Assembly (NCBI RefSeq): GCF_902459465.1
Contig: NC_047075.1
Coordinates: 5,766,001 to 5,830,000 of the forward strand
DNA: 64,000 nucleotides
Direction of reading: 5' to 3'
Source of the DNA: Asterias rubens
Lineage: Eukaryota
Each line of letters starts with the position of its first letter. Position 1 is the stretch's first letter. The translations under genes were made by a program, and so were the position numbers. The notes beneath the pieces were generated by a model, which was not told the DNA's origin, did not search any database, and saw only the letters and a program-made list of their open reading frames with translations. Positions 1 through 42,337 of this stretch are shown piece after piece.

Positions 1-2
1 GC

Positions 3-4916: not shown

Positions 4917-6425
4917 GGTTATATCATCAGTGTTGTGGTCGAAGCCATTGTCAAAGCTATCATTTGTACAGCCCCTAAGTGCACATAGATCAAGTTTAGC
5001 AGTGTACTCCCTGAGTACGAAGAAGAAATCAACAATCAAAGCTGAAAGAAGCATCAACCAACTTCCCTCAGACCAATATCTAGTTTGACAATGTACACTG
5101 AGAAAATATGTTCAATAAAAATTCCCACTTTCATGACTTTAGGATAAAATGTGAGTAATTTGAGGTACATGTGCATGTGAATGAGTTAATCTCAACTCCT
5201 ATGTGGACTATAAGACAATACCAAAGACAATCAAACTTCACTTGTTGGTAGTTAGAGCCTTAAGCCAAGGCTCATGATGCATGCCGTGTGCAATTAAAAC
5301 AGCAGCAAAACTTATGCAAAGCAACATACACATGCAACAGACCAAGTAATCAATGCATTTACATGTATTTATTCAGATGGACTGGAAATGTTCCTGTACC
5401 TACTCATTGTTTATCAAACCTTGACAATGTCATGAAAATAATTTTCGTCTCAGTGATCATGAGACGAAAATAGTTTTAACATGTAAAACCGTATTTTCAT
5501 TGCATTGTTTTACCCATTTCTCAAAACTACAGCACCTCAACCACTAATATTTTAAGGTACACTTTCTACTGCCATTATCTTCAACCAGTGTAAATTTAAT
5601 GTAAATCTGTGGACATTGTGTTTTGTGTTACGAGAAGTACCCAAATTCTTTAATAAACAATAGAAATAGGGAAAAGGTTTATCTTTAGGGGGAAAAATGC
5701 TTCGTACAATGTAGTAATATGATTATTCCCTTTATTCTATAATGAAATACTTGAAATGCAAATAGGATGGCGGAACAAATAGCAATAGTATCATGCATTA
5801 AGCCTAGCCGCTATTGTTTGAACAAAATGTGTGACAAAATAGGAACATTTCACAATGTTAAGACAAAGAGATAAATGTTCTCTAAAAAGTTTCCAAAAAA
5901 CAAAATACACACTTTCATAATCCAACACTCTCAGTGTTTTAACAGGGACAAGAAATGCTCAAACTAGCACAAGAGTGAAAGAATTTGAAGACTACATGTA
6001 CATCAATAGGTGTAGGTACGTGTAATGCAGACATCAAACACATCAAAATGAATTTGGTTATGCAGTGCTGCATAAGCAAACCCTTTTGGCTGAGCAAAGA
6101 TTTGTTTTCTTATTAGATTTATCTGTATTCAAATGTTTTTTTTGTTTTGTTTTAAGTCTAAAAACAAATGCAAGCTTGTATGTAATTACAAAACTGCTTT
6201 TTGAGGTTAATGATTTATTTGTTGACGTAAAGAAGGCTCTATAGTTACCTGTATTGTAGGCTCACTGTGTCTCGCATGCGTATGTTTAACACGGGTCGCT
6301 GTAAAAAACAAAATCTATGTAAAATCAACAGCTTCAACTAGCAATGTGACTGCACAGACAACATTTCATAGAAGTGCTTTTACAATGTAGAGTGAATGCA
6401 TTCATCCACATTGAAATGATTACTG

Positions 6426-7556: not shown

Positions 7557-7670
7557 AAGGCTCTGTGTCGAATGACATGCTCTTTCCATACGTCTCCAAT
7601 ATTTTTCTCCTCGTTGAAGATGTACTTGGACTGTCATTAAAACCAAATAATGTGTCATCATCAAGTTGAA
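7557..7670 (-). CDS. Candidate downstream exon of the F-BAR/C1 gene (QLDDDTLFGFNDSPSTSSTRRKILETYGKSMSFDTEP)
   Basis: AAAAG acceptor, strong CCTT|GTAAGT donor, 114 nt in phase 1-1. The exon linking it to the phase-2 end at 10874 was not securely found. Confidence 0.45.
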
Positions 7671-10873: not shown

Positions 10874-11084
10874 CTGTGTGGTGCTGATTTAGACATGACT
10901 GGATCCCGTCCATCTGGTGCCAGTGAATTGGCGCTGCCACTGGAATAGCTACTTAAGGAAGCTCCTGATGCAGCAATACTACCTGGAACCAGACTAGGCC
11001 TTGGTGAAGTCTCAACACATGTTGCACTAGAAAGATTGGCTGCACATTTAATGGCCTCATATATTGGATCCACCTCTTCAACAT
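10874..11084 (-). CDS. Exon VEEVDPIYEAIKCAANL... followed by a Ser-rich segment (resembles the STAC VDPVYETLRF motif)
   Basis: TTTGCAG acceptor, CACAG|GTATTA donor, 211 nt, phase 1-2. Confidence 0.85.
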
Positions 11085-14000
11085 CTGCAAATACATGCAG
11101 TGTATAGCATCAAATTTAGCTCTCAAAGATTTGCAGTCATTATAAAATGTACATCAACTGGAGTACGTGTGTAAAAAAAACTATGTTTTATGGCCGTACA
11201 AAATAAGAAGGCCACCTAATCGGTAAAAAGATAGAATGTCCCCAACATTCCACTAGTACATGTATTTGAAGTGTTAGACACTTTGGGTCTCAGCTGACTT
11301 TTCACACTGTTTAAATATCAATATGACAGTGACCTACGTATAGAAGAGTACTCAGTGTGGGAACTTAACCTGCTCTGGGAGAGGTTGAATTAGTCTAAAG
11401 TGGTAATGACCTCCAACAATCATCATACGTTCCCTCTTTAATAAATGTTCTTTGACAAGGTTTTTGAAGCTAAATTGCAAGCCCTTTATCAATAGCATTG
11501 TCATGCTGCCCTCTATTCATACATGTAAGTGTTTATCAATAAGAATATTGACCAAATTCGCCTGTCGTCATCATCAGAATAATCTTGGATACATTGCACC
11601 ATACTGATGGGAAATGTAACTGTGCGTTTTTTTCAGTGAAGTGCGCACTTTACAATGTAGGTGATGTGGCTTTCACATGTAAACCTATGTGCCCACCAAC
11701 ATGGTGAGCATGGCAGTCGCCGCGCGTAACGCACGTGCAAGGGGTCAATAGACAGGCACTGGTCTTTAATACCCAATGGTTGGATCATGGCAGTCGCCGC
11801 GTGTAACGCACGTGCAAGGGATCAATAGACAGGCACTGGTCTTTAATACCCAATGGTTGGATCATGGCAGTCGCCGCGTGTAACGCACGTGCAAGGGATC
11901 AATAGACAGGCACTGGTCTTTAATACCCAATGGTTGGATCATGGCAGTCGCCGCGTGTAACGCACGTGCAAGGGATCAATAGACAGGCACTGGTCTTTAA
12001 TACCCAATGGTTGGATCATGGCAGTCGCCGCGTGTAACGCACGTGCAAGGGATCAATAGACAGGCACTGGTCTTTAATACCCAATGGTTGGATCATGGCA
12101 GTCGCCGCGTGTAACGCACGTGCAAGGGATCAATAGACAGGCACTGGTCTTTAATACCCAATGGTTGGATCATGGCAGTCGCCGCGTGTAACGCACGTGC
12201 AAGGGATCAATAGACAGGCACTGGTCTTTAATACCCAATGGTTGGATCATGGCAGTCGCCGCGTGTAACGCACGTGCAAGGGATCAATAGACAGGCACTG
12301 GTCTTTAATACCCAATGGTTGGATCATGGCAGTCGCCGCGTGTAACGCACGTGCAAGGGATCAATAGACAGGCACTGGTCTTTAATACCCAATGGTTGGA
12401 TCATGGCAGTCGCCGCGTGTAACGCACGTGCAAGGGATCAATAGACAGGCACTGGTCTTTAATACCCAATGGTTGGATCATGGCAGTCGCCGCGTGTAAC
12501 GCACGTGCAAGGGATCAATAGACAGGCACTGGTCTTTAATACCCAATGGTTGGATCATGGCAGTCGCCGCGTGTAACGCACGTGCAAGGGATCAATAGAC
12601 AGGCACTGGTCTTTAATACCCAATGGTTGGATCATGGCAGTCGCCGCGTGTAACGCACGTGCAAGGGGTCAATAGACAGGCACTGGTCTTTAATACCCAA
12701 TGGTTGGATCATGGCAGTCGCCGCGTGTAACGCACGTGCAAGGGGTCAATAGACAGGCACTGGTCTTTAATACCCAATGGTTGGATCATGGCAGTCGCCG
12801 CGCGTAACGCACGTGCAAGGGATCAATAGACAGGCACTGGTCTTTAATACCCAATGGTTGGATCATGGCAGTCGCCGCGCGTAACGCACGTGCAAGGGGT
12901 CAATAGACAGGCACTGGTCTTTAATACCCAATGGTTGGATCATGGCAGTCGCCGCGTGTAACGCACGTGCAAGGGGTCAATAGACAGGCACTGGTCTTTA
13001 ATACCCAATGGTTGGATCATGGCAGTCGCCGCGCGTAACGCACGTGCAAGGGGTCAATAGACAGGCACTGGTCTTTAATACCCAATGGTTGGATCATGGC
13101 AGTCGCCGCGCGTAACGCACGTGCAAGGGGTCAATAGACAGGCACTGGTCTTTAATACCCAATGGTTGGATCATGGCAGTCGCCGCGTGTAACGCACGTG
13201 CAAGGGGTCAATAGACAGGCACTGGTCTTTAATACCCAATGGTTGGATCATGGCAGTCGCCGCGCGTAACGCACGTGCAAGGGGTCAATAGACAGGCACT
13301 GGTCTTTAATACCCAATGGTTGGATCATGGCAGTCGCCGCGTGTAACGCACGTGCAAGGGGTCAATAGACAGGCACTGGTCTTTAATACCCAATGGTTGG
13401 ATTGGATAGACAGTACTTACAATGAGGCATGAACAACACTCAAATACCACACACATGTATGAACCCCGATACCATTTTAGTCCAGGAAGTTTGAATGTGA
13501 GTGAGACTTGCACAGTCTATTTCAATAGGCTTTTATACCATAAGAATATACTTACTCGACTCAAAGTACCTAGGAATCTCAAGTTCTGAGGAACTTTTCT
13601 GTTTACGAAGAAGCTTTTTCTTGTCAACCTAAGAGTAATACACAAAAAAACTGCATCAATTCAATTCCATTTGTNNNNNNNNNNNNNNNNNNNNNNNNNN
13701 NNNNNNNNNNNNNNNNNNNNNNNNNNNNNNNNNNNNNNNNNNNNNNNNNNNNNNNNNNNNNNNNNNNNNNNNNNNNNNNNNNNNNNNNNNNNNNNNNNNN
13801 NNNNNNNNNNNNNNNNNNNNNNNNNNNNNNNNNNNNNNNNNNNNNNNNNNNAACAGTAACAGTAACAGTAACAGTAACAGTAACAGTAACAGTAACAGTA
13901 ACAGTAACAGTAACAGTAACAGTAACAGTAACAGTAACAGTAACAGTAACAGTAACAGTAACAGTAACAGTAACAATAACAATAACAATAACAATAACAA

Positions 14001-17000
14001 TAATAATAATAATGATATGGTCATTTATATTGCGCAATGACCAATATAAATATACTCTACTGCGTATTACAAGGAATACAAAAAATGCAGAGAAAAAATT
14101 AAAAAACAAATACACCTAACAGAGCAAGAATGAATTAAATGGGTGAAGTAACAAACGGGGTTTTAACTTAGATTTAAGTTCATTAAGTGAAGAAGACTGT
14201 CTAATGCAAGGTGGGAGATTGTTCCACAGATTTGGAGCGGCGTAAACAAATGCCTGATCATCTAAAGTAGCCCTTGATTTCCTAGATGGGTGAAACAACA
14301 ATGTGTGGTCTTGTCAACTCCCTGAGGCGGTAGGTTGATTGAGACTGAGAGAGTGATTTCATGGTTAGGAGTTCTTGAATGTATGTTGGAGCTAAACCAT
14401 GAATTGCTTTCTCTCTAAACAGTACATCCATGATATTAAAGAGTAAAACAACACACGCATACAGCAAACAAAACTTATGTACCAGAGGTTTGATGTCTCG
14501 AACACTTGATTGGCGCCGAAATACTTTGTTGGATTTTTCCTGAATGATAATGAAAATTAAAATGAAAATAATATGATGAAGAGTGTCATGCTACATCAAA
14601 TGAAAATGGATTATATGATTCAATAGCAACACAGATTGATTGTACAATTAAAACAACGTAACTATGTCAAACTAAAATATGTAATGATGGTCAATTTGTT
14701 TGTTATATTATTTTTTAAATGATAGGCAGCAACAACTCCATATAATTAATTGAAACATTTTGAGCATGCTCCATACATCTGAGAGGTTTTATACTGTACA
14801 CATGCAATAATGGTTGAAATCACAGTGACAAGACAATCGGTCTGTATGGATAACAGCTAGCATATGCTGTTACTACCAGTTTCAAACATCTAATTGCATC
14901 TATCTGAATAAAATGAAGCAAATGAATCACTACTGCAGTGTGTATCAGCCATGATGAGTTATTCTTTATTCCACCGTGTTATCTTACAGCTTGCTCTATT
15001 TGTACTACATGTAGGGTCAAGCTTTTTATTGAACAGACAAAGGCACAGTTTGTAGCCTCTTACTTTGAGTCAGTAACACTCGGTCATTATGATAAGATAT
15101 GTGTGATCTAAAAAATAAAATAAAATCTCTGGGGAACACTCCACATTTAGTGCTCTGGTCTTTGTGCCAATAGCATTCCTTTAATCTTTGTCAGCTCCCT
15201 GGGAGTATACAGCTCTGGGGCGGATTGCAATAAAACAGTCTTAGTCAGCGGTCTAAGACCAGTCAGTTATAGCCGGCTATCTGCCTTAGACGGTCCGTCA
15301 GTCATTAAGCCTGTTGCAATAAGCCGGTCTTAGATAAGTCAGCGTAGAGTAATGAAATACGAACAAATGTCCCATAATACTTAGCACATCTGCAGCACTG
15401 GCGGTACGGCATTGTCCTTATTGTTTTGGTTTAAATCATCGGATATCAAATCTGTGAGTTGTATCATTTTTACTCTTGGGAACATATATTTACGATGTAA
15501 TGTATCATCATCATATATGCCTCTTATGGGTATAATCTATCTCTAAATATTTGATCTCGTCGTTGACCTCTTTGCATCAAATCAATCTTTGCAACCAGTC
15601 TATAATTAAAGACTGTCTAAGCGCGTCTCAAGTTAGCCGACTATAGTGCATAGACCAGTTTAAGACCGCTTGGTGCAATCTGCCCCTGAGCTGCCGTCGC
15701 GTTCCACTACAGCTTGTTCTATTTGTACTACATGTATACCAGGTATTGAGTGAATGGAGTCCTCATTGTTAGCTTGTTAATCCAATATGCAATCCACCTG
15801 GAGTACAAAGCTTTAACAAATGTTCAACAGTAAACTTCAATTTAAATACACATTACAGCATTGGAATTTTCTCTGGAATTTTCTTAATGCTAAATCCAGT
15901 CATGAAAGAACATAGGACGACCAAAAAGAAAACTAGAAATAACCCTCAAAAAGCAAAGGATTACAAAATGCTTGTCTGTCTTCTATGCTTTGTAACCCAA
16001 AAACTTAAAGGAACACGTTGCCTTGGGTCGGTCAAGTTGGTCTTTTAAAAGCGTTTGTAACCGTTTGTAATGAAATGCATATGGTTAGAAAGAACAATCA
16101 GTACACACTCTTTTTCTAGTGTGCACCAGTATTTGTTGGGCTGTCCTAACACCAATTATTCAGATATGAAAACAGCTTTTGTAAGTTAAGTACATGTACA
16201 TGTATGTAACATACCTGTCCTTTACATTCTGGAAAACCCTCCTGGCATTTGTGATGTACATTGCATTTACACAGTTTGCAACGCAAGCCTTGCTTCAGTA
16301 TGCCTAAAAACCATTAGTCAATATCGGGAAAAATCATTAGCAGCATCACTTGTCAACAGAGAGAGTAAATTGCCTCGAAAGCCCTGATAACATTTTCAAT
16401 AACAATCTACATGTGTGTAACCTCAGGGAACCACCTGGGCCCAAGCAAAGAGTTGGCGCTTACAGGAGCAGGGATTTATGTGCTTACTGTACGTCAAGCA
16501 GGTTTTACGCAGTAGTGTGGAATATCGGCCTGTGTACGTGCATACTCTATGTTATTAGGCATTTTACGCTTGCAAATCAAGCGCAGAAATTCCGTGACTT
16601 GAAAGTTCCCATTCCAACAAGCACATTGTGTATTATACAATTGTTGCACGCTGTGACAGGGTCCATGGCGTTTTGTACACTCGAGGGGGAAAATGGAACC
16701 CGAGGGTGTACAAAACCCAAGAACCCCAGGCACAGCGTGCAACACTTGTTTTGTTATACCTTTGTATAATTGTTATTCCTCTTCTTGAAGTTCTGTTGTC
16801 ATCTTCAAACATTATTACGACAGGCTATTCATTGTTTAATAAGCAGACGAACAAGAAACAATTCCCTCGAACCCGCGGTTGTTTCGTACACAGCGCTGGA
16901 TATCGACCAACGCCAGGAACAATCAAGGTGATGTACACCGGTGTACATCACTTTTCATGTTACCCGGCCCGTCGAGCCATGTAACAGGCGTTTTTATTGC

Positions 17001-20000
17001 GCGTCACATGGTTGGTTCTCGTCCAATCAAACTTCACAGTTTGTAATCGGAGGTATAACAAAACCATTTGCATGTTTATGGGCAGTTTATTCACTAGTTC
17101 GCTAGTTCACAGAGCCGGTTTTTATCCATGTAACCTGTTAAACCGTGCATAAACTCTCTGAGGTGTTAATAAATGCACTTAAATGCACTTAAATGCACTT
17201 AATAAATGTGGTTATTACGGCACAGAGAGGGATTCTCAGGAATAATAAGATTGGAATGTCAAGCACCAATAAGATTCAGCCTCAATATTCAACAACTTCC
17301 AAACTTCCAAACTTCTTCTGATTAAATGCAGCTGCAGTATGGGTAATGGTATGGTGGGCTTCCCAAGAGACTGTGCTCAGAAGAACTTAACAATTTATCC
17401 TACTTACAAAGGGTATGAATGTCACAGATAAACATTGTCAAAGAAAAACTATCCAATAGGAATGGTTCCTGATTGTATGTATTGACCTTACTCTGAATAC
17501 AAACATAGCTTTGGTACATTGATAGTTCTTACCTTTTAATAGTCCCCTACAGTGATCACAAAAGGTTGGTTTTTTGAAGTTGTAATCTTGAAAACAGTGT
17601 GATCTTTTGCCACTTTCCAGCATATCTGACAAGCAATCCTTAGCTTCAGAAGATAAAGAACATTGTTCAGACTTGGCAGTCATACGGTCACCCGTTGGCA
17701 ACACATGTCCATTACTAACTCTCCATCCTAGAATCTCTGGGGTAAACAACTTCAGCTAAGAAAAACAAAACCAGATTCAATTTCACTCTTAGCATATTTG
17801 GAATAATTATATTGTTTCTATTGTTGTAACATTTTCACTGTTCTTGGTGGAGGAGCATCTCTTACAACACATCACAACATTTTGAACAGACAAGCTATAT
17901 ATACCACGTGATGTAACGCCGGTTCAGACAGGTGCTCCAGAGTCACCCCAAACCATATTAGGAGCGACTCTGGATCGACCCAGTTAAATTTTGGTTTTAT
18001 ACAGGCGAACTTTACATAACATTTTTATTTGGTTCGGCTCATGACAAGATCAATGTCTGAAACCAAGGTGCTCCAGAGGCGTTCTGAAAGACTGATAACA
18101 GTTGATCTTTCCACTTCTAGTGCATCCAGTTCCTCCATGTTTCAGACGCCCAACTTTTCAAGTACTCCATTTTAAATTTGGTTCGTCACAACTCTTGGGC
18201 GCCTGTCTGAAACTGGTGTTACTTAAATTAAAACTAGAATGAAAGCTTTGGGGTTTCCTTCAAAAGTTTCAGGATGTAATATTTGGTTAAATTGAGCTTC
18301 TCCTGAGGGAAAAGGAAAAAACTCTGAAATCAAATAAAATGACAAACCTGGGCCTGTCTGCTCTCAAGGGCTACTTCAGTCTTTTGCATCTCACTTTTGT
18401 TGATATAGATTTGAGTCAAAATCTCTGTAGCTTTACTATGTTGTTGACTCATTTTTACACTGTCAAAAAATAAATAAAGATACATCTGACTATCGTTAGC
18501 TCAATGCTGAAGTCAAGTCCATTGACCAAGGATATAAACATTCCGAGACCTAAACCCATCAATGGTATGACAACTAATAAGGGAAGGTGAAGGTAAACGT
18601 TTGGTAATCACTCTTATAATTAACAGCACTAAAAGTCAACAGCTACTTTTGATAGTAAAAGTGTTTTGAGAAACATTTCACTTTGAAGTACCGTAACTTT
18701 CGAATTATTAACCACGGTTTATACGTTGATTTTGACATTTTTTTATTCTCCGGGCGACTTGTAGGCCGACGCAAAATAATTAAGAGAAAAAAACGGCATT
18801 TTTTAAAAGAAAGATCGTTTGTAAAATATTCTAAATAATGTTTTTTTTTTCTTAAACGAGAACAAAAACCTGCCTGTGTGATGACAAAATCCTGTTGAAA
18901 ATCCCACCTCAATTGTATTCCGTGTTTCCTTTGTAAAACATTTTATCAACCCCCCTCAGCTCCCCCTCTCAGCGCAACTCGGGTTAGACTAGACTGGTCC
19001 CCTGTCTATTTATCCCACGATCTTTATATACTGACGTCAGACATCCAGGCTACACTCGTGCCAGCCAGCGGTTTCTTCAGATCAACCACGCAAACCGCAA
19101 CAGCAGAATGGTGAATTGACATACACAAAGAACTATGCCGCGCCTGGGGGATCAAACAAAACGTTTTCAAACCGCCCTGATTGTTGAGTCAAGTAACATT
19201 TAACACTTAAGAATTTTAGCGCATTTCCAGGCGGCGTAAATGTCGAGGGTGAAGCGCAACCCGTCAGCGAACATCGCTCAATACGGTGCCCCCAACATCT
19301 GTTGTGCAATCTCGAGATTGAGCAGCGCAATTAACAGATTGCTAGCTTTACGAACTCGCATGTGTACATGTGAATAATGTGCACGATGTAGGATACATTA
19401 CTACACACACGCTACTCGTTGCAATATCTGTTGTAGATCCTCGTTGTGGGTGGGCCTACAAAAAAGTGAGGGATCAACACCGACCAACCACTTTTCTTTA
19501 ATTCCCTTATTTCCCGTCTACTCCGATGTTTAATAAAAGTGAATCCCCTGTCCTTGTGATTACGCAAACAATAAGGTAGCGCATTTAGTTTCATACTTTT
19601 TGCCGTCCCCATTATTATTATTTTTTTTACATTTTGTAAAGGAATTTCGTTAGGAACTGTGTACATGTTTAAAAAATGTTACTATATACATTGTAAAAAG
19701 AAACAACAGTCATATGCAATACTCTCTTTTGTGGTAGCACTGAAAAGGACTGTTTGGTTTTTGGTTTTTGTCTATTTTCTATTTAAACAAAACCGACTCG
19801 GAAGGCAAAGGATTCCTTGGATATAAATCTCCGCACTGTTCTTTATCACTACTTCTGAAGACTAATTCTATGTTGAAATGTTGGTCAAAGCACTGTCTGA
19901 AGTTAATTTTCATTGCAACACGAACTCACTTACCTACAAATAAAGTGGGATTTAACTTTGTCAATTTTTAAAATTTTTATTGGATTTTTTCAGTATCACA

Positions 20001-22227
20001 ATAATAAACAAATTTTCAGTTCTAGCTTACATCAATAATTATCCAACACAAACAATAATGTGGTCCCGCAAAGGGGGTGCTGCCAGCTTACAAAAAGGAA
20101 TGCTATCCTATAATAGATCATTTCAATTACGATCAATAGTATAAACTTCAATACATTTCCACTTTAATTACGACGCAACTCCCACATTGTGGCAACTAGA
20201 CAAGACTGACTGATGTGCCGCCCGCCTGTCACGGCACATCGCCACAAAGAGGACCGCAAACAAGCACGGCCCCTTTGTGTGTACGCATGTTGTGATTGGC
20301 CGTTTGATGATTGGCCGGTGATAGTTCCATTCATAAAATCTTGGCTAGACTTCGGACGGATCGAGTAGAGTGGCTGCCTATTGTACAACAAATAGTTTGA
20401 ACGTCTGACAGCTGACCCACACTTCGAGGCTCGGGGTCCAGTCAAATCAAACGTGAACAACTTTTGTCAACAGAGGGCAATGCGATGCAGGGTAAAGTTC
20501 AACTATTTCTCAGTGTGCATTGTTGACCGATCTTTGATTCACAGAGATTTTGTTGTCAAAGAAGTTCAGAAATGGTCAACACAACCGATCATCAAATCGC
20601 AAATTCTTGAAAAGGGTTGTTGATGGCCAAAAAAATAACTTAGGACTGATAGTGTGAGATAAAAAATCATCCGTAACGCGGCAGGTTTGCGTTCTTCACT
20701 TCCGTGTTTTGAGGTTAGTTTGCTCATGTTTTGTTTTTGTTTTGGTCGCGGTTTCTACGCCGCGCGGCATATATGACGACACCTTAATATTTGTTTGTAT
20801 ATTTTGGGGAAGTGCAGTTTATACGTCGCGCGGTTTATAATCCGAAAATTACGGTAATGTGGTTATGTAAAAAGATACCAGTTTTTATCCCCTACAATAT
20901 GCATCTGAGAAGCATTTCAATCAGTAATGTTTTTCAGATTGTATGTGATTAAGTTACTTGTGAAATCTTGATTTAAACTGTCAAATAACACCTTTATTTC
21001 GTCCAGAGTATTTTTCCTCATTTCTTTGTCTTTTCTTTACTTATTTTGCAGAAATAAAAGATCGGCGTGATCAATGAAATATGAACTATGAATATCCACT
21101 TCAAAGCGGAGATTCCACAGACCTTATTATAATTTAAACCTGTTGGCTTTGTATGTAATAAAGTTCACACAGTATTTTATATTTATTTTACCATCTCACA
21201 AAACACAACTATCATACAGTACTTACATATCATATTGCCTTTTGAGTTTACTCTGAGTCTCCTTTCTTGTTGCCAATTGCTTTTCCATTTCATTCACCTG
21301 AAATTACATGTACACATTTACATTAAAACAGATGCTAAATCATAGTGTGACAATGTAACAACTTTTTGAAATAATACTAGCAGTAACAGAGCCATTTTAA
21401 TAAGCAAAAGAATTAACAAATAATGTACATTGAATGCAGTTATATTGTTACCTCTTTAACCAGCATGTCATATTTGCCTTGAAGCACCTTCTCTGTTGCC
21501 AGATTCACCACCAGCTTCTTTTCCACAAAGTCCTTCAGGAGAAACAAACAAACAAACTCTTTTTAAAAGCAAATAGTATGTAAATACATACGCCCAGGAC
21601 CTAGAGTGCTTGAGTGGTGTACCTGCACAGCAACTTTGGTATACATACAGTCTCTGTGGTCTCTAGTGCCGAAGCACTGAGTAAAAATGTTCTTGCCGCT
21701 TACCGAGTTAGTGAAACTCTCTCGATCGGTGTATAACATGTCAAACAAGTCAACAATGTGTATGTGTTCGGTACATTGGATAGTTTTCTAAAGACTTTTC
21801 CAGTAAAATAAACAGTTGCCCCTTCAAAATGTCTTGCTTAACCCTAACCCCCTGACTGTTTTTGCTAAAAAACATACCTAATCCGCCAAAATCAATCAAA
21901 TGAGAGACAGTAAATATGCAACTGTACTGAATCCACCATAATCAACCAAAGCATTGTTTACATAAGTACTGAATCCATCAGAACCAATCACTAACATCTT
22001 GGAGTATTTTGATGGACTTGGTCTATTTAGGTATCCAACTCTAGTGTCACTACTGGTTGTTACATAGCTGAATCCATCACAATCATGACAATCAACCAAC
22101 TGAACGAATTGTGATTGAACAAACTTAGATAAGTCTATGTACATTTACTTTGGTTTTTTTGGTGGCTCAGTCTCAATGAAATTATTCTGTTCGCACAGCC
22201 GTTACAGGAATATCATTGTTGCATCAC

Positions 22228-22266
<39 letters not shown>

Positions 22267-31200: not shown

Positions 31201-34200
31201 GTACTTTTTCGCGACAATCTCCACGCGACAATCTCCACGCGAATAATGCTGGACCATTCTCCTTGCATGGTTGCGTGAATGCTTGAGATGTGATTCATTG
31301 TTGTTCCGAGCTGAAAGCAACCACAGCCTATTACAGATTTATTTAAAAGGAAACAGTCGGTTTGATTTGAAGAACTCTTTACTGATAAGAAGTTTGAAAC
31401 TTTAGCGGCATCACAAAGGAAATGAACCAATACAGCCCATTCCAAATGAACGAACACACGAAAGTTCTATAGTGTCACTTTTATATAAACCTTCCGCCCC
31501 TCTGTCCAGTGCTGGTCTAAAACTAACCCAATAGGCAACCGACTACATGTACGTCTTTATTTGGAAGGAGGCAACCGGTTTTATTGGACGAGCTAGTTTC
31601 AGAAACAAGTATAAAAAGCTAGCGGTATCACATAGGAAGTGTACATGTATTTTTATCTTCTAACACTCGCTTAATACTCCAATCAGATGCTCGAACCGAG
31701 TTTGATATAAAAGCTATAACCTACCCCCAGTTATTGCACTCTGCGTATTGTGAGTGTCAATGCATCCAGCTCAGCATACGATCAGTGCAAAAAATCACAT
31801 TCTAAAGCTTTGCGCGTCAAAACCAATAACAAAAACACAACCTGACCTCATTGATTTAATAAGGCTGGAAGATGAATTCGTTATTACAAGCTACATGTAC
31901 CATCCAACTCGGCCTTCTGGCCTCGTTTGACATGGGACGCAGAAGCGCTATATTTTTCTGTATTCCACTCTTTAAAAAAAGCAATTGCCAGTGCTGACCA
32001 GTACTGTACATCTAGCATTACCTTCAACAAACTGCAATCATTCATCCTGATTTCTTGACAAAGATTTTCACGATAGCGAATTGCATCATTGAGTATGATA
32101 CGACTTGTTGTCTGCTGAACTGCATTACTTACACCACTCTCAAGATTGTTTGCAAGATCAAAGTAATCCTGCAATCATAAATAATCAAAGAATAAAGAGT
32201 AGCAAAAATCATTCATCTCAAACCAATCTCATAACATCAATAAAAAGTTCATTTAATTGTAACTAGGAGACCAGGTTTGACACTTTTTGTTGCAAAATAA
32301 GATGTTTGTTTTAAATATTGTTCCAATGTGTATTGCTACTAAACATCCCTTCAACATGTTGAATCAATAGTAATTTGGTCTGTAGTGCTAATTTTTAAGG
32401 GACATACTTTTTAAACAACAATATTTAGGCCGTTATGTCATGCATGTGCAGCATCATGCTATATGCACACAAAATGTTGGATGCGTATGACTGCATTTTC
32501 AACAAGAAGTGGAACCTGGACTGCTCCATTTTAGGAGAAGCCTAGTAAGGGGAGGCAGATTTCCCGAACAGACAGACTGACTGGTTAATCATCCTGCATC
32601 TTGCACGATACATTGTACCTCACACACAGACCTTTGTATTTTTGAACTTTTTTTTTCCAAGATAAACTTAACACAAAATAAACTCATCCACCCCACACTC
32701 TGAAAATTATTTTGAAAAACTTCTGAACAACAGGGCCAACTCAACCAGAAACAACCTAACCTCACAGGACAAAATAACAAAGATCTGGTCAATTATAACC
32801 ATATTGGATTCCATCATTAAAATGTTGAGTGTTGTGTAATGATACAAAGCAAAATATAGGATGTCACATGCTGCACCAATCAAATACCATGTAAGAAGGA
32901 TCTGTGTTGTGGACAGTGATTCAGAATATAGTTACAGGTAATGAATGTACTCACAATAGATACAGCAGCATATTCATCCAATAGTTTCTCCCATACATTC
33001 ACAAACCACTGGTGCTCACAATGCTTCCTGTCAATTGCAATCATGCTAACAATTAATCAAAATCAAACAAAAGAATGAATTAAAAAATTAGTGTTCCCCA
33101 CATTGGTTTTATAACAGTTCAATTCAAACAACATGTATTTCCATATCACAGAAATACGACAGCAGTGCATGCAGAAGATAGACAACTAATTAAGTAAACT
33201 TACAAATAATAATATCTAGTTCTTAGAGCATTTTACAAAAAGGGAAGGGTTGTGCCTTTATCAAATGTTCACTTCTCTTTTAGTCCCATTCATAAAGGCC
33301 TTTTTGTTAATTTAAGTGAAATCAAGTTGGAAAATAAGGGGGGAAAATCAAGACGATTTTAAATTTCTGACATGGGGCTCCGTTTTGCTTGGGTCAAGGT
33401 AAAGATACATGTTGACTCACCCATCTCTGATAACAGCTTGGTCTCTGAATGATTCTACTAATGACTGCAGATTAATGGCCAGGTTCTCATACAATAAAGC
33501 AACTTGATGGGAAAACTCTAAAACTGTACAAACAAAATCAAAACACAATTTGCCTCTTAAGTTATCTTAAGTGTAAGAATGTACCAAATTAAGGGGGGGG
33601 GGGGTGTGATTCATGGGTTCTCAGATCTTCTTCCAAAAAAATGGGAGTAATACATCATCTTACCAAACGAATAAATCCAAAATATTAGTTTGCAGACGCT
33701 TTCGGTAATTGGAGTTATCAGTTTTCAATGTTTTGGCCAAAAAGCCCCTGTGAAACGAATAACTACATTCCCTGTAAACACTAAAATGTGCGCCAAGCTC
33801 GTCCCATAAAAAGTAAAACAGAAAATTTATTTTAAAAAATTCTGTCTTCAAAGCCCTGTCAACACTTTCTCAAATGAACAAGGGCTCCAAGTGGTTATAA
33901 TATTGAAGCCTCATATGGTGCAAACCTGTAACAACAAACTAAACAGAGGTCTGACATGACTGAAAACATAGATGATGTCATCAGGTTCGGAGTAAGATTA
34001 TTTTAATGATTTACTTATTTTTCTAATAGCTGAACTACACCCTGTACTGGCCTACACGCTGGATTAACATTACAAATGCATTTAACCTGAGATTTTATAA
34101 CAACACACAAAAATATGCATTGACTTGCTCCCAATATAAACTTGTTATTCCAGTCCAAACCAGAAGCTAATGTAGACAAATATTTTTCAATTCTATTTTG

Positions 34201-40200: not shown

Positions 40201-42337
40201 AGCAATTACAGCACAAGGAATAACTACCATAGGGATAACAGTTTATAAACGTTTTCAGTAAAGCAATTCCAGCACAAGGAATAACTACCATAGGGATAAC
40301 AGTTAATAAACGTTTTCAGTAGGCCTAAATCAATTACAGCACAAGGAATAACTACCATAGGGATAACAGTTAATAAACGTTTTCAGTAAAGCAATTACAG
40401 CACAAGGAATAACTACCATAGGGATAACAGTTAAAAAGCTTTTTCAGTAAAGCAATTACAGCACAAGGAAACTCAAAAGTACATCAAAATCGTAACGTGA
40501 GTAACCGCGGAATTGCCCAGAACATTCCATCTTTCAACTCATGAACATATTCGCATAAGTGCACTCATAAACATTCATTATGTGTAAAATATCAGTCATT
40601 GAGAAAAATAAACTATCAACCTACTGTAACAGAAACAATAAAAGGAGAAAAGATTATAGGAAACCATTGGAAACTATGCCATTTCAATGATTGAAGACAT
40701 TACTACATGTAATTGAAAGATCAGAATAAATGTTGATTTAAATACTCTTTATCCCTCCTTTCCATTCATCTCAGTAATTTATCTCAGTAATTGGTCCAGT
40801 GGTGTAAATGTAATGGACTGTAAGGAGCAATAAATTGTTTAGTTCAGAGCATGATCCAAAACTGGTAAACATTTGAAGAAGAATTGAACAGAAAATCTTA
40901 GTAATTTCATTTTTTTTTTCATTCTAAAATCTATTTGTTTTTAAATTTTGTGTTTAGAAAATAACTCTCAGTGTCTTTCTTTGTGAAAATAACTTTCAAT
41001 AATATGAAGTTATATGTTTTCTACCCAGGCTGTGACACCCAAAGAAAGCTAATACACTGTATGTTAAGGGTTATCCATGCTTATAACATGTAAATCAGTT
41101 TTTAAAGGCAGTGGACGCTATTGGTAATTACTCAAAATAATTATCAGCATAAAATGTTCTTTCACAGTTATCTTGCAACTCCAACGACCAATCAAGCTCA
41201 AATTTTCACAGGTTTGTTATTTTATGCATCTAGGTTGAGATGACCAAGTGAGAAGACTGGTCTTTGACAAACATTGAACATGAAACCTGTAAATGGAATG
41301 CCTCATGAGTATCACCCAAACTAAGTTGGGAATAACTGCAGGAAACGCAATTATTTGTATCCTGGATGAAATATCAGTTGAAGCATCAACCTAAAAAAAT
41401 CAAAAGAAATTGACCCTTTCTAATAAATTAGAATTTTTACTACAGTTGCATCAACATCATTTGGTTGGAGATGCCTGCACTGTACATAAATGGGCTAAGA
41501 CTTATGAAAAGCCCATTGTACAGTCAGTATTAGATTAGACTGTTATGGTGATTGCTTCCAACTAGTCTAATGTACATTTCACATCAAAATATGCACATCA
41601 AACACAATGGAAATTGAAATAAAAAAGTTCATTACTAATCAATTTAGTTATTTCCCTGGTTTAAATATGAATCAAAGCCAAGATCGATAAACTCTAAACT
41701 TAAGTTTACGAAAACTTGGCCTTAAAAAGTACATTAATTTCTATAAAGTAATAAGCTGACTGGGTAAGTTTGATATAATTTGAGGGTGAGGAAAGAAAAG
41801 GGCAGGATTTGAAACAACAACCTCCAGACTATAGTGCTGGCGCTCATTCAAGTAACTGAGATATAGGAACGAACTAAACTGCTCACAAAAAGTAAGGAAA
41901 CTTGTTTCAATCCAGTATATTTGTTAAAAAACACTCTCTTTGATGGTATATATCAATGCAAAGCTGAACTGTTCCTCTTGAAAATGATACCACATTTGCA
42001 ACGATTACATGTTGCTGGACTTTGCCATTTCATTTTTATGTTTTATTTTCTTTTGCACAACCAAATACAAAATAAACAGGGAAAAGAAATCATCACTCTC
42101 AATCCCAGTATTTTCTAAAAAGATTGAACTGGGTTATGAAAAAAAATGTCTTGTTTTACCTGCTAAATCTAAATAGAAAGAGGTGTAAATACCTGTGTGA
42201 AGAGGCCATTGGGAGTCAGACATTTTCCCCTGTCCTGAACGAACACGTAGCTTGTCACTCACTGTGCTTCCACGACGTGACCCTCGGCCATTTGAAATAC
42301 TACCAACAGAAGACATTTTGCCAGATGAATTGCTCAT
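10874..42337 (-). CDS. Multi-exon gene encoding F-BAR + coiled coil + C1 (DAG/phorbol-binding type) + STAC-like motif
   Basis: GT-AG exons: 42337-42193, (34232-34125?), 33517-33421, 33045-32955, 32168-32022, 30862-30800, 30375-30262, 28214-28134, 27780-27652, 21532-21452, 17755-17533, 16303-16215, 14539-14483, 11394-11370, 11084-10874. Splice phases are compatible throughout the chain. Confidence 0.85.
11370..11394 (-). CDS. 25-nt micro-exon (TNSTSPRA-D)
   Basis: CACTTTAG acceptor and GCAG|GTTAAG donor; supplies the phase 0-to-1 change required between the flanking exons. Confidence 0.6.
11709..13402. repeat. 77-bp tandem array, 22 copies
   Basis: Unit CATGGCAGTCGCCGCGYGTAACGCACGTGCAAGGGRTCAATAGACAGGCACTGGTCTTTAATACCCAATGGTTGGAT; 1694/77 = 22.0; only two variable sites seen. 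Confidence 0.98.
13675..13850. other. Assembly gap (N run)
   Basis: 176 N. Confidence 1.
13851..14013. repeat. (AACAGT)n microsatellite grading into (AACAAT)n and (AAT)n
   Basis: Read directly from the sequence. Confidence 0.98.
14014..14440 (-). mobile_element. L2-clade LINE 3' fragment (frameshifted)
   Basis: KAIHGLAPTYIQELL and QAFVYAAPNLWNNLPPCIRQSSSLNELKSKLK match the L2/CR1 ORF2 C-terminus; ends in an (ATT)n tail. Confidence 0.8.
14483..14539 (-). CDS. Exon EKSNKVFRRQSSVRDIKPL (post-C1 basic motif)
   Basis: CATTCAG acceptor, CTG|GTACAT donor, 57 nt, phase 0-0. Confidence 0.8.
15218..15685. mobile_element. 468-bp PIF/Harbinger-type MITE inserted in a SINE remnant
   Basis: TIR GGGCGGATTGCA / TGCAATCTGCCC; CTG duplicated at 15215-17 and 15686-88; subterminal TAAGAC/GTCTTA motifs. 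Confidence 0.75.
16215..16303 (-). CDS. C1 domain second half (GILKQGLRCKLCKCNVHHKCQEGFPECKGQ)
   Basis: TTTTTAG acceptor, CAG|GTATGT donor, phase 1-0; completes the Cys6His2 C1 pattern. Confidence 0.93.
17533..17755 (-). CDS. Exon with C1 domain first half (HCFQDYNFKKPTFCDHCRGLLK)
   Basis: TTCTTAG acceptor, AAG|GTAAGA donor, 223 nt, phase 0-1. Confidence 0.93.
17913..18222. mobile_element. ~310-bp MITE
   Basis: TAACGCCGGTTCAGACAGG versus CCTGTCTGAAACTGGTGTTA inverted ends. Confidence 0.6.
18691..20854. mobile_element. 2.16-kb non-autonomous Tc1/mariner-superfamily (pogo/Tc2-like) element
   Basis: TA|CCGTAACTTTCGAATTATTAACC ... GGTTTATAATCCGAAAATTACGG|TA; TA duplication; no clear transposase ORF inside. 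Confidence 0.7.
21452..21532 (-). CDS. Exon DFVEKKLVVNLATEKVLQGKYDMLVKE (coiled coil after the F-BAR)
   Basis: Pyrimidine tract + GAAG acceptor, GAG|GTAACA donor, 81 nt, phase 0-0. Confidence 0.8.
22433..24651 (-). pseudogene. piggyBac (PGBD-type) transposase, disrupted by frameshifts and a stop
   Basis: YFLKFF, EIRAWFGIHLVMG..YWS, MTRNRF, TIDKAM, KPIRAGFK, YTDKLYTS, YMGGVDRGDQL and a C-terminal CxxC/CxxC/CxxxC-H domain. Frameshifts lie between ~23.85 and 24.0 kb, and a TAG at ~23.70 kb. Confidence 0.92.
24832..24916. repeat. 85-bp hairpin / mini-MITE
   Basis: TATACCACC..ATATGAATGG.ACTGG.GACCC is inverted as GGGTCACCAGTCCCATTCATAT..GGTGGTATA. Confidence 0.7.
25074..26109. mobile_element. 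1036-bp non-autonomous Transib-type element
   Basis: Ends CACAGTGGTTTAAGACCC / GGGTTTTAAACCACTGTG; exact 5-bp TSD CAGTG at 25069-73 and 26110-14. Confidence 0.85.
27235..27585. mobile_element. TTAA-flanked (Kolobok-type) MITE, family A
   Basis: AGACACTGGACACTATT ... AATAGTGTCCACTGCCT|TTAA; other copies at 41.1, 44.4 and 46.6 kb. Confidence 0.8.
27652..27780 (-). CDS. F-BAR exon LTDQGNRMDTIINTVQNASEPSSVCHDQTKQYEFSKPHQNAAG
   Basis: TTTATAG acceptor, GGG|GTAAGT donor, 129 nt, phase 0-0. Confidence 0.85.
28134..28214 (-). CDS. F-BAR exon DIERVNAEITGLAVKEVVRQAQLTRSK
   Basis: TTTCTAG acceptor, AAG|GTCAGC donor, 81 nt, phase 0-0. Confidence 0.85.
28337..28472. other. Assembly gap (N run)
   Basis: 136 N. 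Confidence 1.
28473..29700 (+). mobile_element. R4/Dong-clade non-LTR retrotransposon 3' part (RT thumb, CCHC knuckle, restriction-like endonuclease); disrupted
   Basis: KAINTWAVS..RLYLPRSEGGRGL; CRMC..ETVFHIVSEC; RHDK; KILWDFNIQTD..RRPDVV..IDIAVP..EKIEKY. In-frame TAG stops at 28824 and 28971 and one frameshift. Confidence 0.92.
29708..30053 (-). mobile_element. tRNA-headed SINE with an L2-like 3' end
   Basis: Minus strand shows B-box-like GGTTTCGAATCCC, central GGTAAATGGGTACC, and 3' AAAAGCGCTATATAAAA followed by an (ATT)n tail. Confidence 0.75.
30262..30375 (-). CDS. F-BAR exon NHNTALCYNKHNDYVLQLTGINILNAGICNTALPSLSK
   Basis: Typical F-BAR 'N.Y.L.L...N.......LP.L' motif; AAA|GTAAGT donor; 114 nt, phase 0-0. 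Confidence 0.9.
30800..30862 (-). CDS. F-BAR exon LEKEYSEAWHKMDRDGMDNIK
   Basis: TTAACAG acceptor, AAG|GTTGGT donor, 63 nt, phase 0-0. Confidence 0.82.
32022..32168 (-). CDS. F-BAR exon DYFDLANNLESGVSNAVQQ...DCSLLK
   Basis: ATTGCAG acceptor, AAG|GTAATG donor, 147 nt, phase 0-0. Confidence 0.88.
32955..33045 (-). CDS. F-BAR exon ...QWFVNVWEKLLDEYAAVSI
   Basis: F-BAR 'W..LL.E' motif; ATT|GTGAGT donor; phase 2-0; an alternative in-frame acceptor exists at 33028. Confidence 0.85.
33421..33517 (-). CDS. F-BAR exon FSHQVALLYENLAINLQSLVESFRDQAVIRDG
   Basis: Resembles the first F-BAR helix (FSQKKAAIEREYA..MQKL in FCHSD type); GG|GTGAGT donor; phase 1-2. Confidence 0.85.
34125..34232 (-). CDS. Possible exon carrying the start of the F-BAR domain
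   Basis: Open in phase 1-1 (..IEKYLSTLASGLDWNNKFILGA), but the donor GTCAAT is weak. Confidence 0.35.
36656..40518. mobile_element. 3.86-kb non-autonomous TIR element with 4-bp TSD (Sola2-like termini)
   Basis: AGAA|GGGCAATTCC ... GGAATTGCCC|AGAA; asymmetric subterminal motifs; contains a nested MITE and a 61-bp satellite. Confidence 0.55.
39607..40470. repeat. 61-bp tandem array, about 14 copies
   Basis: Unit TAACTACCATAGGGATAACAGTTAATAA(GCC/ACG)TTTTCAGTAAAGCARTTACAGCACAAGGAA. Confidence 0.97.
42193..42337 (-). CDS. Probable first coding exon of the F-BAR/C1 gene (MSNSSGKMSS...QWPLHT)
   Basis: TCTTTAG acceptor at 42349, in-frame TAA two codons before the ATG, ACAG|GTATTT phase-1 donor. 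Confidence 0.7.

What the first reader, a model, noticed from the sequence alone, without database searches (positions are those of the whole stretch)
10874..42337. F-BAR-C1 protein with a STAC-like motif: a domain architecture absent from vertebrate STACs
Seen: a phase-compatible exon chain joins an F-BAR domain (W..LL.E; N.Y.L.L...N...LP.L) to a coiled coil, a complete C1 domain, FRRQSS and VDPIYEAIK. Known: vertebrate STAC1-3 are C1 + U motif (VDPVYETLRF) + SH3-SH3 calcium-channel adaptors without an F-BAR. Fission-yeast Bzz1 is F-BAR-C1-SH3-SH3, and ARHGAP29/45/GMIP are F-BAR-C1-RhoGAP. Inference: this gene may preserve an ancestral Bzz1-like form linking STAC to membrane-bending F-BAR proteins. 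None of the F-BAR exons is evident from the ORF track alone.
Basis: partly seen in the sequence, partly recalled or inferred. Interest (0 to 1): 0.75.

Follow-up and report, generated by a model that had tools for sequence, protein, structure and literature searches.

The report
Starfish Stac-like gene with F-BAR domain
The exon chain is real and encodes the starfish version of the invertebrate "Stac-like" calcium-channel adaptor, which carries a membrane-bending F-BAR domain that vertebrate STAC proteins lack; this layout has already been described for the fruit-fly gene Dstac, so the gene is a new member of a known kind.

Summary
Observation confirmed. On the minus strand, 18 GT-AG exons (42337 down to 6249) splice into an open 1896-nt frame. 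Its 632 residues are identical to the first 632 of Asterias rubens RefSeq XP_033638434.1, "uncharacterized protein LOC117299102 isoform X2". Both N gaps are intronic and no ortholog residue is missing.

RNA contigs confirm introns 9-12 and the junction 27652>21532. They also show exon 14 (FRRQSS) being skipped.

The protein has five parts:
- A divergent F-BAR. Pfam FCH does not hit the starfish protein, but it hits 15 of 20 aligned orthologs. Family profiles hit the srGAP2 and Fes F-BARs, and the predicted fold matches F-BARs almost exclusively.
- A helical hairpin that weakly resembles HR1.
- A complete C1 domain.
- The STAC U-domain core (EVDPIYEAI against stac2 KVDPVYETL).
- A tandem SH3 encoded left of the window, whose closest solved relative is STAC3 (7e-24). 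There is no RhoGAP.

The architecture and its absence from vertebrates hold. It is not new, though: Hsu et al. 2020 state that Dstac and other invertebrate Stacs have a putative BAR domain, and hundreds of arthropod "Stacl" proteins carry FCH+C1+SH3. The link to Bzz1 is unresolved. Interest is low to moderate.

The parts
42193..42337 (-). Exon 1: ATG at 42337, aa 1-48. Ser/Gly/Arg-rich N-terminus and start of the first F-BAR helix.
   Evidence: tblastn of P0022 is 100% identical over aa 1-48. Donor ACACAG|gtattt, phase 1.
33421..33523 (-). Exon 2, aa 49-82 (TVLEFSHQVALLYENLAINLQSLVESFRDQ...). FCH part of the F-BAR.
   Evidence: This stretch corresponds to the region that Pfam FCH hits in orthologs.
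32955..33027 (-). Exon 3, aa 83-107 (KHCEHQWFVNVWEKLLDEYAAVSI). An alternative acceptor at 33045 adds MIAIDR, giving RefSeq isoform X1.
   Evidence: The 6-aa insert is seen in P0170.
32022..32168 (-). Exon 4, aa 108-156. F-BAR helix.
30800..30862 (-). Exon 5, aa 157-177 (LEKEYSEAWHKMDRDGMDNIK).
30262..30375 (-). Exon 6, aa 178-215 (NHNTALCYNKHNDYVLQLTGINILNAGICNTALPSLSK). The most conserved F-BAR block: N, Y, L, N and P are invariant from arthropods to starfish.
   Evidence: Invariant columns in A2 and A4.
28337..28472 (.). Assembly gap (N) inside intron 6. Not coding.
   Evidence: Exons 6 and 7 join without any missing ortholog residue.
28134..28214 (-). Exon 7, aa 216-242.
27652..27780 (-). 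Exon 8, aa 243-285. End of the long F-BAR helix and a disordered linker containing the conserved QYxFxKP motif.
   Evidence: An RNA contig runs from exon 9 into 27653-27682.
21452..21532 (-). Exon 9, aa 286-312. Start of the helical hairpin (HR1-like).
   Evidence: RNA joint 21297>21452.
21227..21297 (-). Exon 10, aa 313-335. Hairpin.
   Evidence: RNA joint 18459>21227.
18348..18459 (-). Exon 11, aa 336-373. Hairpin.
   Evidence: RNA joint 17755>18348.
17533..17755 (-). Exon 12, aa 374-447. Conserved LFTPEILGWRVSNGH motif, a linker, and the first half of C1 (His codon at 17599).
   Evidence: Pfam C1_1 E=1.6e-5, profile positions 1-29. 100% identical to the ortholog. RNA joint 16302>17532.
16215..16303 (-). 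Exon 13, aa 448-477. Second half of C1.
   Evidence: Pfam C1_1 E=2.5e-5, profile positions 23-49..
14483..14539 (-). Exon 14, aa 478-496 (EKSNKVFRRQSSVRDIKPL). A 57-nt cassette exon, phase 0-0.
   Evidence: It is skipped in RNA contigs of X1 and X2 and in RefSeq isoform X3, P0169.
13675..13851 (.). Assembly gap (N) inside intron 14, followed by an (AACAGT)n repeat. Not coding.
   Evidence: An RNA contig splices exon 13 directly to exon 15 across it.
13556..13628 (-). Exon 15, aa 497-520 (VDKKKLLRKQKSSSELEIPRYFES). Conserved basic/Ser motif of the STAC linker.
   Evidence: K, L, R, Q, K and S are invariant in A1.
10874..11084 (-). Exon 16, aa 521-590. Holds the U-domain core EVDPIYEAIK (VDPIYEAIK at 11073-11047), then a Ser-rich linker ending in KSAPH.
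   Evidence: D, P, Y, I and K are invariant in A1. The critical stac2 residues KVD/PVY/ETL are from Niu et al. 2018.
7557..7630 (-). Exon 17, aa 591-615 (SPSTSSTRRKILETYGKSMSFDTEP).
6249..6298 (-). Exon 18, aa 616-632 (STRVKHTHARHSEPTIQ). This is the last coding exon in the window. The SH3-SH3 exons (aa 633-758) lie beyond the left end.
   Evidence: No SH3 match anywhere in the window.

Best explanation
The region is the 5' five-sixths of the starfish (Asterias rubens) ortholog of the invertebrate Stac-like gene, known as Dstac or Stacl in arthropods. RefSeq annotates it only as 'uncharacterized protein LOC117299102'.

The protein is built as follows:
- A divergent F-BAR domain, about aa 41-251.
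- A disordered linker.
- A two-helix hairpin, aa 299-375.
- A complete C1 domain, aa 426-475.
- A linker with the conserved KKLLRKQKSSSE motif and the STAC U-domain core (EVDPIYEAI).
- A tandem SH3, encoded left of the window.

Inferred mechanism, by homology with vertebrate STAC1-3 and fly Dstac: it is an adaptor of L-type (CaV1) calcium channels. The tandem SH3 and the C1 would dock it on the channel. The U-domain would bind the channel's C-terminal calmodulin-regulatory module and suppress Ca2+-dependent inactivation. The F-BAR, presumably as a dimer, would tether the complex to curved, acidic plasma-membrane or T-tubule-like membrane.

What is shown: gene structure, splicing, domain content and orthology. 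What is inferred: channel binding and membrane binding. Because echinoderms, amphioxus and arthropods all share the F-BAR form, the short vertebrate STACs most likely arose by loss of the N-terminal module.
For: - Gene model: 18 GT-AG exons with an open frame, 632/632 identical to RefSeq P0172.
- RNA: spliced contigs and reads confirm introns 8-12. One 1887-nt contig runs from the first C1 exon upstream through exons 11, 10 and 9 and at least 255 nt further, beginning in exon 8.
- C1: Pfam hits on both exon halves, and 47.5 bits in full-length P0022.
- STAC identity: the C-terminal half of P0022 hits the STAC3 tandem SH3 6uy8 at 7e-24, then STAC1 and STAC2. Sources name the Patiria and Anneissia orthologs 'SH3 and cysteine-rich domain-containing protein-like'. 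STAC2_u1 is sub-threshold in the Acanthaster ortholog (E=4.6e-4). The U-domain core matches the residues shown to be critical in stac2.
- F-BAR: profile A2 against PDB puts srGAP2 F-BARx on top (1.6e-7). Profile A4 puts the Fes F-BAR on top (5.4e-6). Pfam FCH hits 15 of 20 aligned N-terminal domains, best 9.5e-8. BLASTP of starfish aa 41-130 against arthropod Stacl gives 1e-5 to 1e-8. hhalign against the sea-spider protein gives probability 99.3%. The AF2 model (pLDDT 71) has long helices at 41-81, 89-125, 128-171 and 179-251. Foldseek best matches are almost all F-BARs: srGAP2, Fes, CIP4, PACSIN, Hof1, FBP17 and GAS7, and TOCA, CIP4, Fer, Bzz1, FCHSD1 and srGAP.
- Literature: Hsu et al. 2020, PMC7573238.
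Against: - Pfam FCH does not hit the Asterias protein itself, even at E<=1. The F-BAR call rests on transitive homology, family profiles and a medium-confidence model.
- Foldseek TM-scores are low (0.2-0.37), as is common for long bent helices modelled as monomers.
- STAC2_u1 does not hit exon 16 alone or P0022.
- The SH3 exons are not in the window, so that part relies on the RefSeq protein, which is identical over the shared 632 residues.
- No functional data exist for any echinoderm Stac. In Drosophila the role of the BAR domain is explicitly unknown.
Confidence: 0.88

Rival explanations
1. It is an ARHGAP29/ARHGAP45/GMIP-type protein (F-BAR-C1-RhoGAP), and the STAC-like motif is coincidental.
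For: F-BAR followed by C1 is also the N-terminal layout of that family (general knowledge). The C1 half-domains alone are generic, with PKC as best match.
Against: The full-length protein, identical over the window's 632 residues, ends in a tandem SH3 closest to STAC3 (7e-24). No ortholog shows a RhoGAP Pfam hit. No RhoGAP-like motif appears in the remaining 6.2 kb of the window. A linker of about 160 residues with STAC motifs follows the C1.
Confidence: 0.01
2. The N-terminal module is not a true F-BAR. It would be another long helical or coiled-coil domain that scores weakly against F-BAR models because of composition.
For: No Pfam FCH hit for the starfish protein itself. Low TM-scores. Coiled-coil noise (GCN4, Rad50, spectrin) appears in the profile searches at E of 0.07-1.
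Against: The significant hits are specifically to F-BAR domains and align in register: FCH profile positions 12-77 fall at the N-terminal helices in five different orthologs, and srGAP2 residues 22-167 align there too. 15 of 20 homologs hit FCH. The Foldseek best matches are almost all F-BARs, with a few I-BAR chains, at probabilities up to 1.00.
Confidence: 0.07
3. The F-BAR-containing mRNA is a minor form. The main products would be short, vertebrate-like C1-U-SH3-SH3 isoforms from an internal promoter, so the F-BAR exons would be functionally a separate unit.
For: N-terminally shorter isoforms are annotated in crinoid and Lytechinus orthologs. Dstac is heavily alternatively spliced, with BAR-containing and BAR-less transcripts.
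Against: In Asterias all three RefSeq isoforms start at the same ATG. The best-covered RNA contig (depth 82-91) joins the first C1 exon to exons 11, 10 and 9 and runs on into exon 8. No pile-up of read starts was reported in 16100-21600 (table 6).
Confidence: 0.15

Closest known systems
Drosophila Dstac / arthropod 'Stacl' (invertebrate Stac-like proteins)
   Same: Same overall architecture: N-terminal FCH/F-BAR ('putative BAR'), C1, conserved linker, tandem SH3. The N-terminal domains are directly alignable: BLASTP 1e-5 to 1e-8 and hhalign probability 99.3%. Precomputed Pfam on many members is FCH + C1_1 + SH3. Hsu et al. 2020 say other invertebrate Stacs share the BAR domain.
   Different: The starfish F-BAR is more divergent and gets no direct Pfam FCH hit. 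Arthropod proteins are often longer, 800-1300 aa with many isoforms. No echinoderm member has been studied, and RefSeq calls it 'uncharacterized'.
Vertebrate STAC1, STAC2 and STAC3
   Same: C1 domain. U-domain core: EVDPIYEAI against stac2 KVDPVYETL, 5 of 9 identical and 2 more conservative. Tandem SH3, with best solved match STAC3 at 7e-24.
   Different: Hsu et al. 2020 state that vertebrate Stacs lack the BAR domain. The roughly 375 N-terminal residues (F-BAR plus hairpin) therefore have no counterpart in them, and the starfish protein is about twice as long. I did not align vertebrate sequences myself.
Amphioxus homologs (Branchiostoma LOC118403213 and relatives)
   Same: Same architecture. 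The N-terminal domain is 30% identical to starfish. Pfam FCH E=2e-5.
   Different: A longer, Arg/Asp-rich linker between the hairpin and the C1. As a chordate it places the loss of the F-BAR on the line leading to vertebrates, after amphioxus split off; tunicates were not examined.
TOCA-1/FNBP1L, CIP4, FBP17 and fungal Bzz1
   Same: They are best fold matches over aa 42-375, that is F-BAR plus the following hairpin. The profile hits the TOCA-1 HR1 domain weakly at 1.4e-3 and 4.5e-3.
   Different: No specific sequence affinity was shown. Fer, FCHSD1 and srGAP score similarly. Pfam HR1 does not hit. These proteins have no U-domain, and the SH3 part shows no Bzz1 match among the best 60.
ARHGAP29 / ARHGAP45 / GMIP
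   Same: F-BAR followed by a C1.
   Different: They continue with a RhoGAP domain. This gene continues with a STAC linker and tandem SH3.

Membership tests
STAC / Stac-like family | C1 (cysteine-rich) domain | tested here: met
   Pfam C1_1 on exon 12 (E=1.6e-5, profile 1-29) and exon 13 (E=2.5e-5, profile 23-49). 47.5 bits in full-length P0022, above the 26.5 cutoff.
STAC / Stac-like family | Conserved U-domain in the C1-SH3 linker (stac2 KVD-PVY-ETL, critical for suppressing CaV1 inactivation) | tested here: met
   EVDPIYEAI in exon 16. D, P, Y, I and K are invariant in six echinoderm orthologs. The critical residues come from Niu et al. 2018. Caveat: Pfam STAC2_u1 is only sub-threshold in Acanthaster (21 bits against a 27.8 cutoff) and absent for Asterias.
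STAC / Stac-like family | C-terminal tandem SH3-SH3 | tested here: met
   Not encoded in the window. It is present in RefSeq P0172, which is identical to the window's 632 residues. The matching part of the close ortholog P0022 hits the STAC3 tandem SH3 6uy8 at 7e-24, STAC1 6b25 at 1e-15 and STAC2 6b26 at 6e-14.
STAC / Stac-like family | Binds and modulates L-type CaV1 channels | not testable with these tools
   Inference from homology only.
F-BAR (FCH/EFC) domain | Direct match of the protein to the Pfam FCH model | tested here: not met
   No FCH hit at E<=1 for P0022 or at E<=0.01 for P0172:36-376. Single exons also gave none.
F-BAR (FCH/EFC) domain | Homology to FCH/F-BAR shown through relatives or profiles | tested here: met
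   15 of 20 aligned orthologous domains hit FCH, best 9.5e-8. Hits in amphioxus, S. purpuratus, Antedon and Diadema all fall at the same N-terminal position. Family profiles hit srGAP2 F-BARx at 1.6e-7 and the Fes F-BAR at 5.4e-6.
F-BAR (FCH/EFC) domain | Elongated bundle of long helices with F-BAR topology | tested here: met
   AF2 model with pLDDT 71 and helices 41-81, 89-125, 128-171 and 179-251. Foldseek best matches are almost all F-BARs at probabilities up to 1.0, though TM is only 0.2-0.37.
F-BAR (FCH/EFC) domain | Crescent dimer that binds or bends acidic membranes | not testable with these tools
   No dimer model or assay was made.
ARHGAP29/45/GMIP (F-BAR-C1-RhoGAP) | RhoGAP domain directly after the C1 | tested here: not met
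   No RhoGAP Pfam hit in any of 14 full-length orthologs scanned. A STAC linker and SH3-SH3 follow the C1 instead.
TOCA/CIP4/Bzz1 type (F-BAR-HR1-...-SH3) | HR1 (REM) hairpin after the F-BAR | tested here: inconclusive
   The hairpin at aa 299-375 is modelled at pLDDT around 90. Profile hits to the TOCA-1 HR1 5frg are 1.4e-3 and 4.5e-3, and to the CIP4 HR1 2ke4 0.96. Pfam HR1 gives no hit, and coiled-coil noise starts at E of about 0.07.
TOCA/CIP4/Bzz1 type (F-BAR-HR1-...-SH3) | Specific phylogenetic grouping of the F-BAR, C1 or SH3 with Bzz1 | not tested
   No tree was built. In the fold search Bzz1 ranks 5 and 15, among TOCA, CIP4, Fer and FCHSD1 at similar E-values.

The most novel reading that the evidence does not exclude
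The N-terminal module of invertebrate Stac-like proteins is a TOCA/CIP4/Bzz1-type unit: an F-BAR plus a GTPase-binding HR1-like hairpin. On this reading the STAC family descends from an ancient F-BAR-HR1-(C1)-SH3-SH3 endocytic and actin adaptor, and vertebrate STACs are N-terminally truncated survivors. In invertebrates, CaV1 channel regulation would then be coupled to membrane curvature and possibly to Cdc42/Rho signalling.
Probability: 0.2. Interest if true: 0.5.

Novelty: new member of a known kind. Interest (0 to 1): 0.27.

Why it matters
It gives a name and a domain map to a RefSeq 'uncharacterized protein' of the common starfish. Together with amphioxus and arthropod homologs, it shows that the F-BAR-bearing Stac form is the general bilaterian state. 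The short vertebrate STAC1-3 therefore most likely arose by loss of the N-terminal module on the line leading to vertebrates.

The function of that BAR domain is an acknowledged open point in the Dstac literature. A deuterostome invertebrate with a compact three-isoform gene could be a useful second system. The core observation is not new to the field, however.

Tried and rejected
- Pfam scans of single stop-free exon ORFs found only the two C1 halves. No FCH, SH3 or STAC2_u1 appeared because the exons are too short.
- Two candidate exons picked by eye (21036-20920 and 18141-18028) were dropped. The ortholog alignment and RNA joints showed the real exon 11 at 18459-18348.
- A motif scan and tblastn for SH3 or RhoGAP exons in window 1-6248 found nothing.
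- phmmer of the first C1 exon against PDB was uninformative, giving generic PKC C1 hits.
- A single-protein word-index search with the N-terminal region found only three starfish proteins. Alignment queries were needed to reach amphioxus and arthropods.
- Hsu et al. 2018 (PMC6103890), the primary source for the BAR-domain statement, is not held. I rely on its citation in Hsu et al. 2020.
- Earlier scan notes gave nothing on this gene.
- I did not submit a spliced protein as typed letters. All full-length analyses used the database proteins P0172 and P0022, which are identical or near-identical to the model.

Full report
**What is in the sequence**

The region is eukaryotic, with about 38% G+C and short exons separated by long, repeat-rich introns. 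The two halves of a C1 domain lie at 17755-17533 and 16303-16215, with canonical splice sites. Pfam C1_1 matches profile positions 1-29 and 23-49 at E=1.6e-5 and 2.5e-5.

**Finding a guide protein**

A full-database phmmer search with the first C1 exon found P0001, an Acanthaster planci protein of 753 aa. It is 64% identical over the whole exon, and further echinoderm proteins followed.

tblastn of P0001 to the window gave a strictly colinear series of minus-strand matches from 42.3 kb down to 6.2 kb. P0022 (Asterias amurensis, 758 aa) matched at 93-100% within each exon, apart from alignment spill-over past the splice sites.

**Gene model**

I fixed the boundaries at AG/GT sites and assembled 18 exons:

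| Exon | Coordinates | Exon | Coordinates |
|---|---|---|---|
| 1 | 42337-42193 | 10 | 21297-21227 |
| 2 | 33523-33421 | 11 | 18459-18348 |
| 3 | 33027-32955 | 12 | 17755-17533 |
| 4 | 32168-32022 | 13 | 16303-16215 |
| 5 | 30862-30800 | 14 | 14539-14483 |
| 6 | 30375-30262 | 15 | 13628-13556 |
| 7 | 28214-28134 | 16 | 11084-10874 |
| 8 | 27780-27652 | 17 | 7630-7557 |
| 9 | 21532-21452 | 18 | 6298-6249 |

- The exons sum to 1896 nt with no stop, and all introns are GT-AG.
- The 632-aa product is identical to residues 1-632 of P0172 = XP_033638434.1, 'uncharacterized protein LOC117299102 isoform X2 [Asterias rubens]'.
- Isoform X1 uses an alternative acceptor at 33045 that adds MIAIDR. Isoform X3 also lacks exon 14.
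- The last 126 residues, which hold the two SH3 domains, are not encoded anywhere in the window and must lie beyond its left end.

**Assembly gaps**

- N 28337-28472 sits in intron 6.
- N 13675-13851 sits in intron 14.
- The ortholog sequence is continuous across exons 6|7 and 14|15, with no residue unaccounted for.
- RNA splices across the second gap.

**RNA evidence**

I laid two RNA-type contig sets (X1, X2) and two raw RNA-seq runs (X12, X13) of the same species label on 16100-21600.

- Joints 16302>17532, 17755>18348, 18459>21227 and 21297>21452 all have CT..AC ends on the plus strand, which is GT..AG on the minus strand. They match introns 12, 11, 10 and 9 exactly.
- One 1887-nt contig covers exons 12 and 11 and continues upstream. 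Its loose end at 21533 is exactly window 27653-27682, the 3' end of exon 8. This confirms 27652>21532 and places an F-BAR exon and the first C1 exon on one assembled transcript.
- A second loose end at 16213 equals 13597-13626, meaning exon 13 is spliced directly to exon 15. Exon 14 (FRRQSS, 57 nt, phase 0-0) is therefore a cassette exon, in agreement with isoform X3.
- Raw-read depth is low, so the gene is modestly expressed in those samples.

**Is it STAC-like?**

- The C-terminal half of P0022 finds the tandem SH3 of human STAC3 as its best solved relative (6uy8, 7e-24). STAC1 and STAC2 tandem SH3s follow, with generic PKC C1 domains ranked between them.
- Sources name the Patiria and Anneissia orthologs 'SH3 and cysteine-rich domain-containing protein-like'.
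- Niu et al. 2018 showed that stac2 residues KVD(200-202), PVY(203-205) and ETL(206-208) are necessary for suppressing CaV1 Ca2+-dependent inactivation. The starfish has EVD-PIY-EAI at the matching place after the C1. D, P, Y, I and K are invariant across echinoderm classes.
- Pfam STAC2_u1 is only sub-threshold, and only in Acanthaster.
- No ortholog has a RhoGAP domain, so the ARHGAP29/45/GMIP alternative is excluded.

**Is the N-terminus an F-BAR?**

Pfam FCH does not hit the Asterias protein directly. Five other lines support an F-BAR:

1. FCH hits orthologs at the same N-terminal position: amphioxus 2e-5, S. purpuratus 3e-4, Antedon 0.02, Diadema 0.1. It hits 15 of 20 members of a starfish-to-insect alignment of the domain, best 9.5e-8.
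2. The starfish segment aa 41-130 finds arthropod Stacl proteins by plain BLASTP at 1e-5 to 1e-8. hhalign of the deuterostome alignment to a sea-spider protein gives probability 99.3%.
3. Family profiles searched against PDB sequences put srGAP2 F-BARx on top (1.6e-7), or the Fes F-BAR (5.4e-6) with the broader alignment.
4. An AlphaFold2 model (pLDDT 71) has four long helices between aa 41 and 251, a disordered stretch, then a confident two-helix hairpin at 299-375.
5. Foldseek best matches in PDB and Swiss-Prot AFDB are almost entirely F-BAR proteins: srGAP2, Fes/Fer, CIP4, TOCA-1, FBP17, PACSIN, Hof1, GAS7, FCHSD1 and Bzz1. Probabilities reach 1.0, though TM-scores are low.

I conclude that this is a divergent F-BAR. 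The hairpin gives weak hits to the HR1 domain of TOCA-1 (1.4e-3 and 4.5e-3) and of CIP4 (0.96). I regard this as suggestive only.

**Comparison with what is known**

- Hsu et al. [quoted passage not shown] - A profile search returned 424 proteins at E<=1e-5. The 120 listed are arthropod proteins named Stacl, 'SH3 and cysteine-rich domain-containing protein', or mis-named VAV2. Many carry precomputed FCH + C1_1 + SH3.
- Amphioxus homologs have the same layout.
- The architecture is therefore known and widespread in bilaterian invertebrates. The starfish gene is an unnamed member of that family.
- Its presence in arthropods, echinoderms and a cephalochordate implies that the domain was lost on the line leading to vertebrates.
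- The specific link to fungal Bzz1 is not resolved. Bzz1 is one of many F-BAR proteins with similar fold-search scores, and the SH3 and C1 parts show no special Bzz1 affinity.

**Mechanism**

All of this is inferred, not shown here. I read the protein as an L-type calcium-channel adaptor.

- The tandem SH3 and the C1 would dock it on CaV1.
- The U-domain would lock the channel's calmodulin module and suppress inactivation.
- The F-BAR would dimerise the protein and anchor it on curved, acidic membrane.
- Exon 14 carries an RRQSS basic/Ser motif, and exon 15 carries KKLLRKQKSSSE. Skipping exon 14 may tune phosphoregulation of the linker. This last point is speculation.

**Verdict**

- The architecture is not novel, and the gene is a new member of a known kind.
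- The deeper Bzz1 ancestry remains open.

Noticed in passing
window 14483-14539 (exon 14) and 33028-33045: Two alternative-splicing events. The 57-nt FRRQSS cassette exon is skipped in the best-covered RNA contigs and in RefSeq isoform X3. An upstream acceptor at 33045 adds MIAIDR in isoform X1. The cassette carries a basic/Ser motif (RRQSS) that resembles a basophilic-kinase site.
   Followed up: partly
window 21493-17750 (aa 299-375, exons 9-12): A confidently modelled two-helix hairpin between the F-BAR and the C1 gives weak profile hits to the HR1 domains of TOCA-1 (E 1.4e-3 and 4.5e-3) and CIP4 (0.96). Pfam HR1 does not hit. It could be a GTPase-binding module or just a coiled coil.
   Followed up: partly
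window 22436-23692, minus strand (intron 8): An intact-looking 419-aa ORF of a piggyBac-type transposase: Pfam DDE_Tnp_1_7 E=2e-40 plus the C-terminal zinc finger. It is N-terminally short relative to the profile, which starts at position 100. A further 234-aa acidic and basic ORF lies just upstream at 23950-24651.
   Followed up: partly
window 11709-13402 (intron 15) and 39607-40470 (intron 1): Two satellite-like tandem arrays. One has 22 copies of a 77-bp unit at 99% identity. The other has 14 copies of a 61-bp unit at 92% identity. An (AACAGT)25 microsatellite abuts the assembly gap at 13852-14003.
   Followed up: no
window 16650-17050 (intron 12): Very high RNA contig and read depth (thousands, against about 90 on the exons) on both strands, with many loose ends. 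This suggests a highly expressed or high-copy repeat family inside the intron, not part of the gene's mRNA.
   Followed up: no
window 17599-17533 and 16303-16221 (C1 domain): The closest solved relatives of the C1 are the diacylglycerol/phorbol-binding C1 domains of PKC beta, delta and theta (E down to 4e-15). The STAC3 C1 (2db6) scores only 6e-9. It may therefore be a lipid-binding 'typical' C1.
   Followed up: no
database proteins P0052, P0054, P0092 and others: Several arthropod Stac-like proteins are named 'guanine nucleotide exchange factor VAV2' or 'protein vav' in RefSeq, although their recorded Pfam domains are FCH + C1 + SH3 with no DH or PH. This looks like a naming error propagated from the shared C1-SH3 part.
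   Followed up: no
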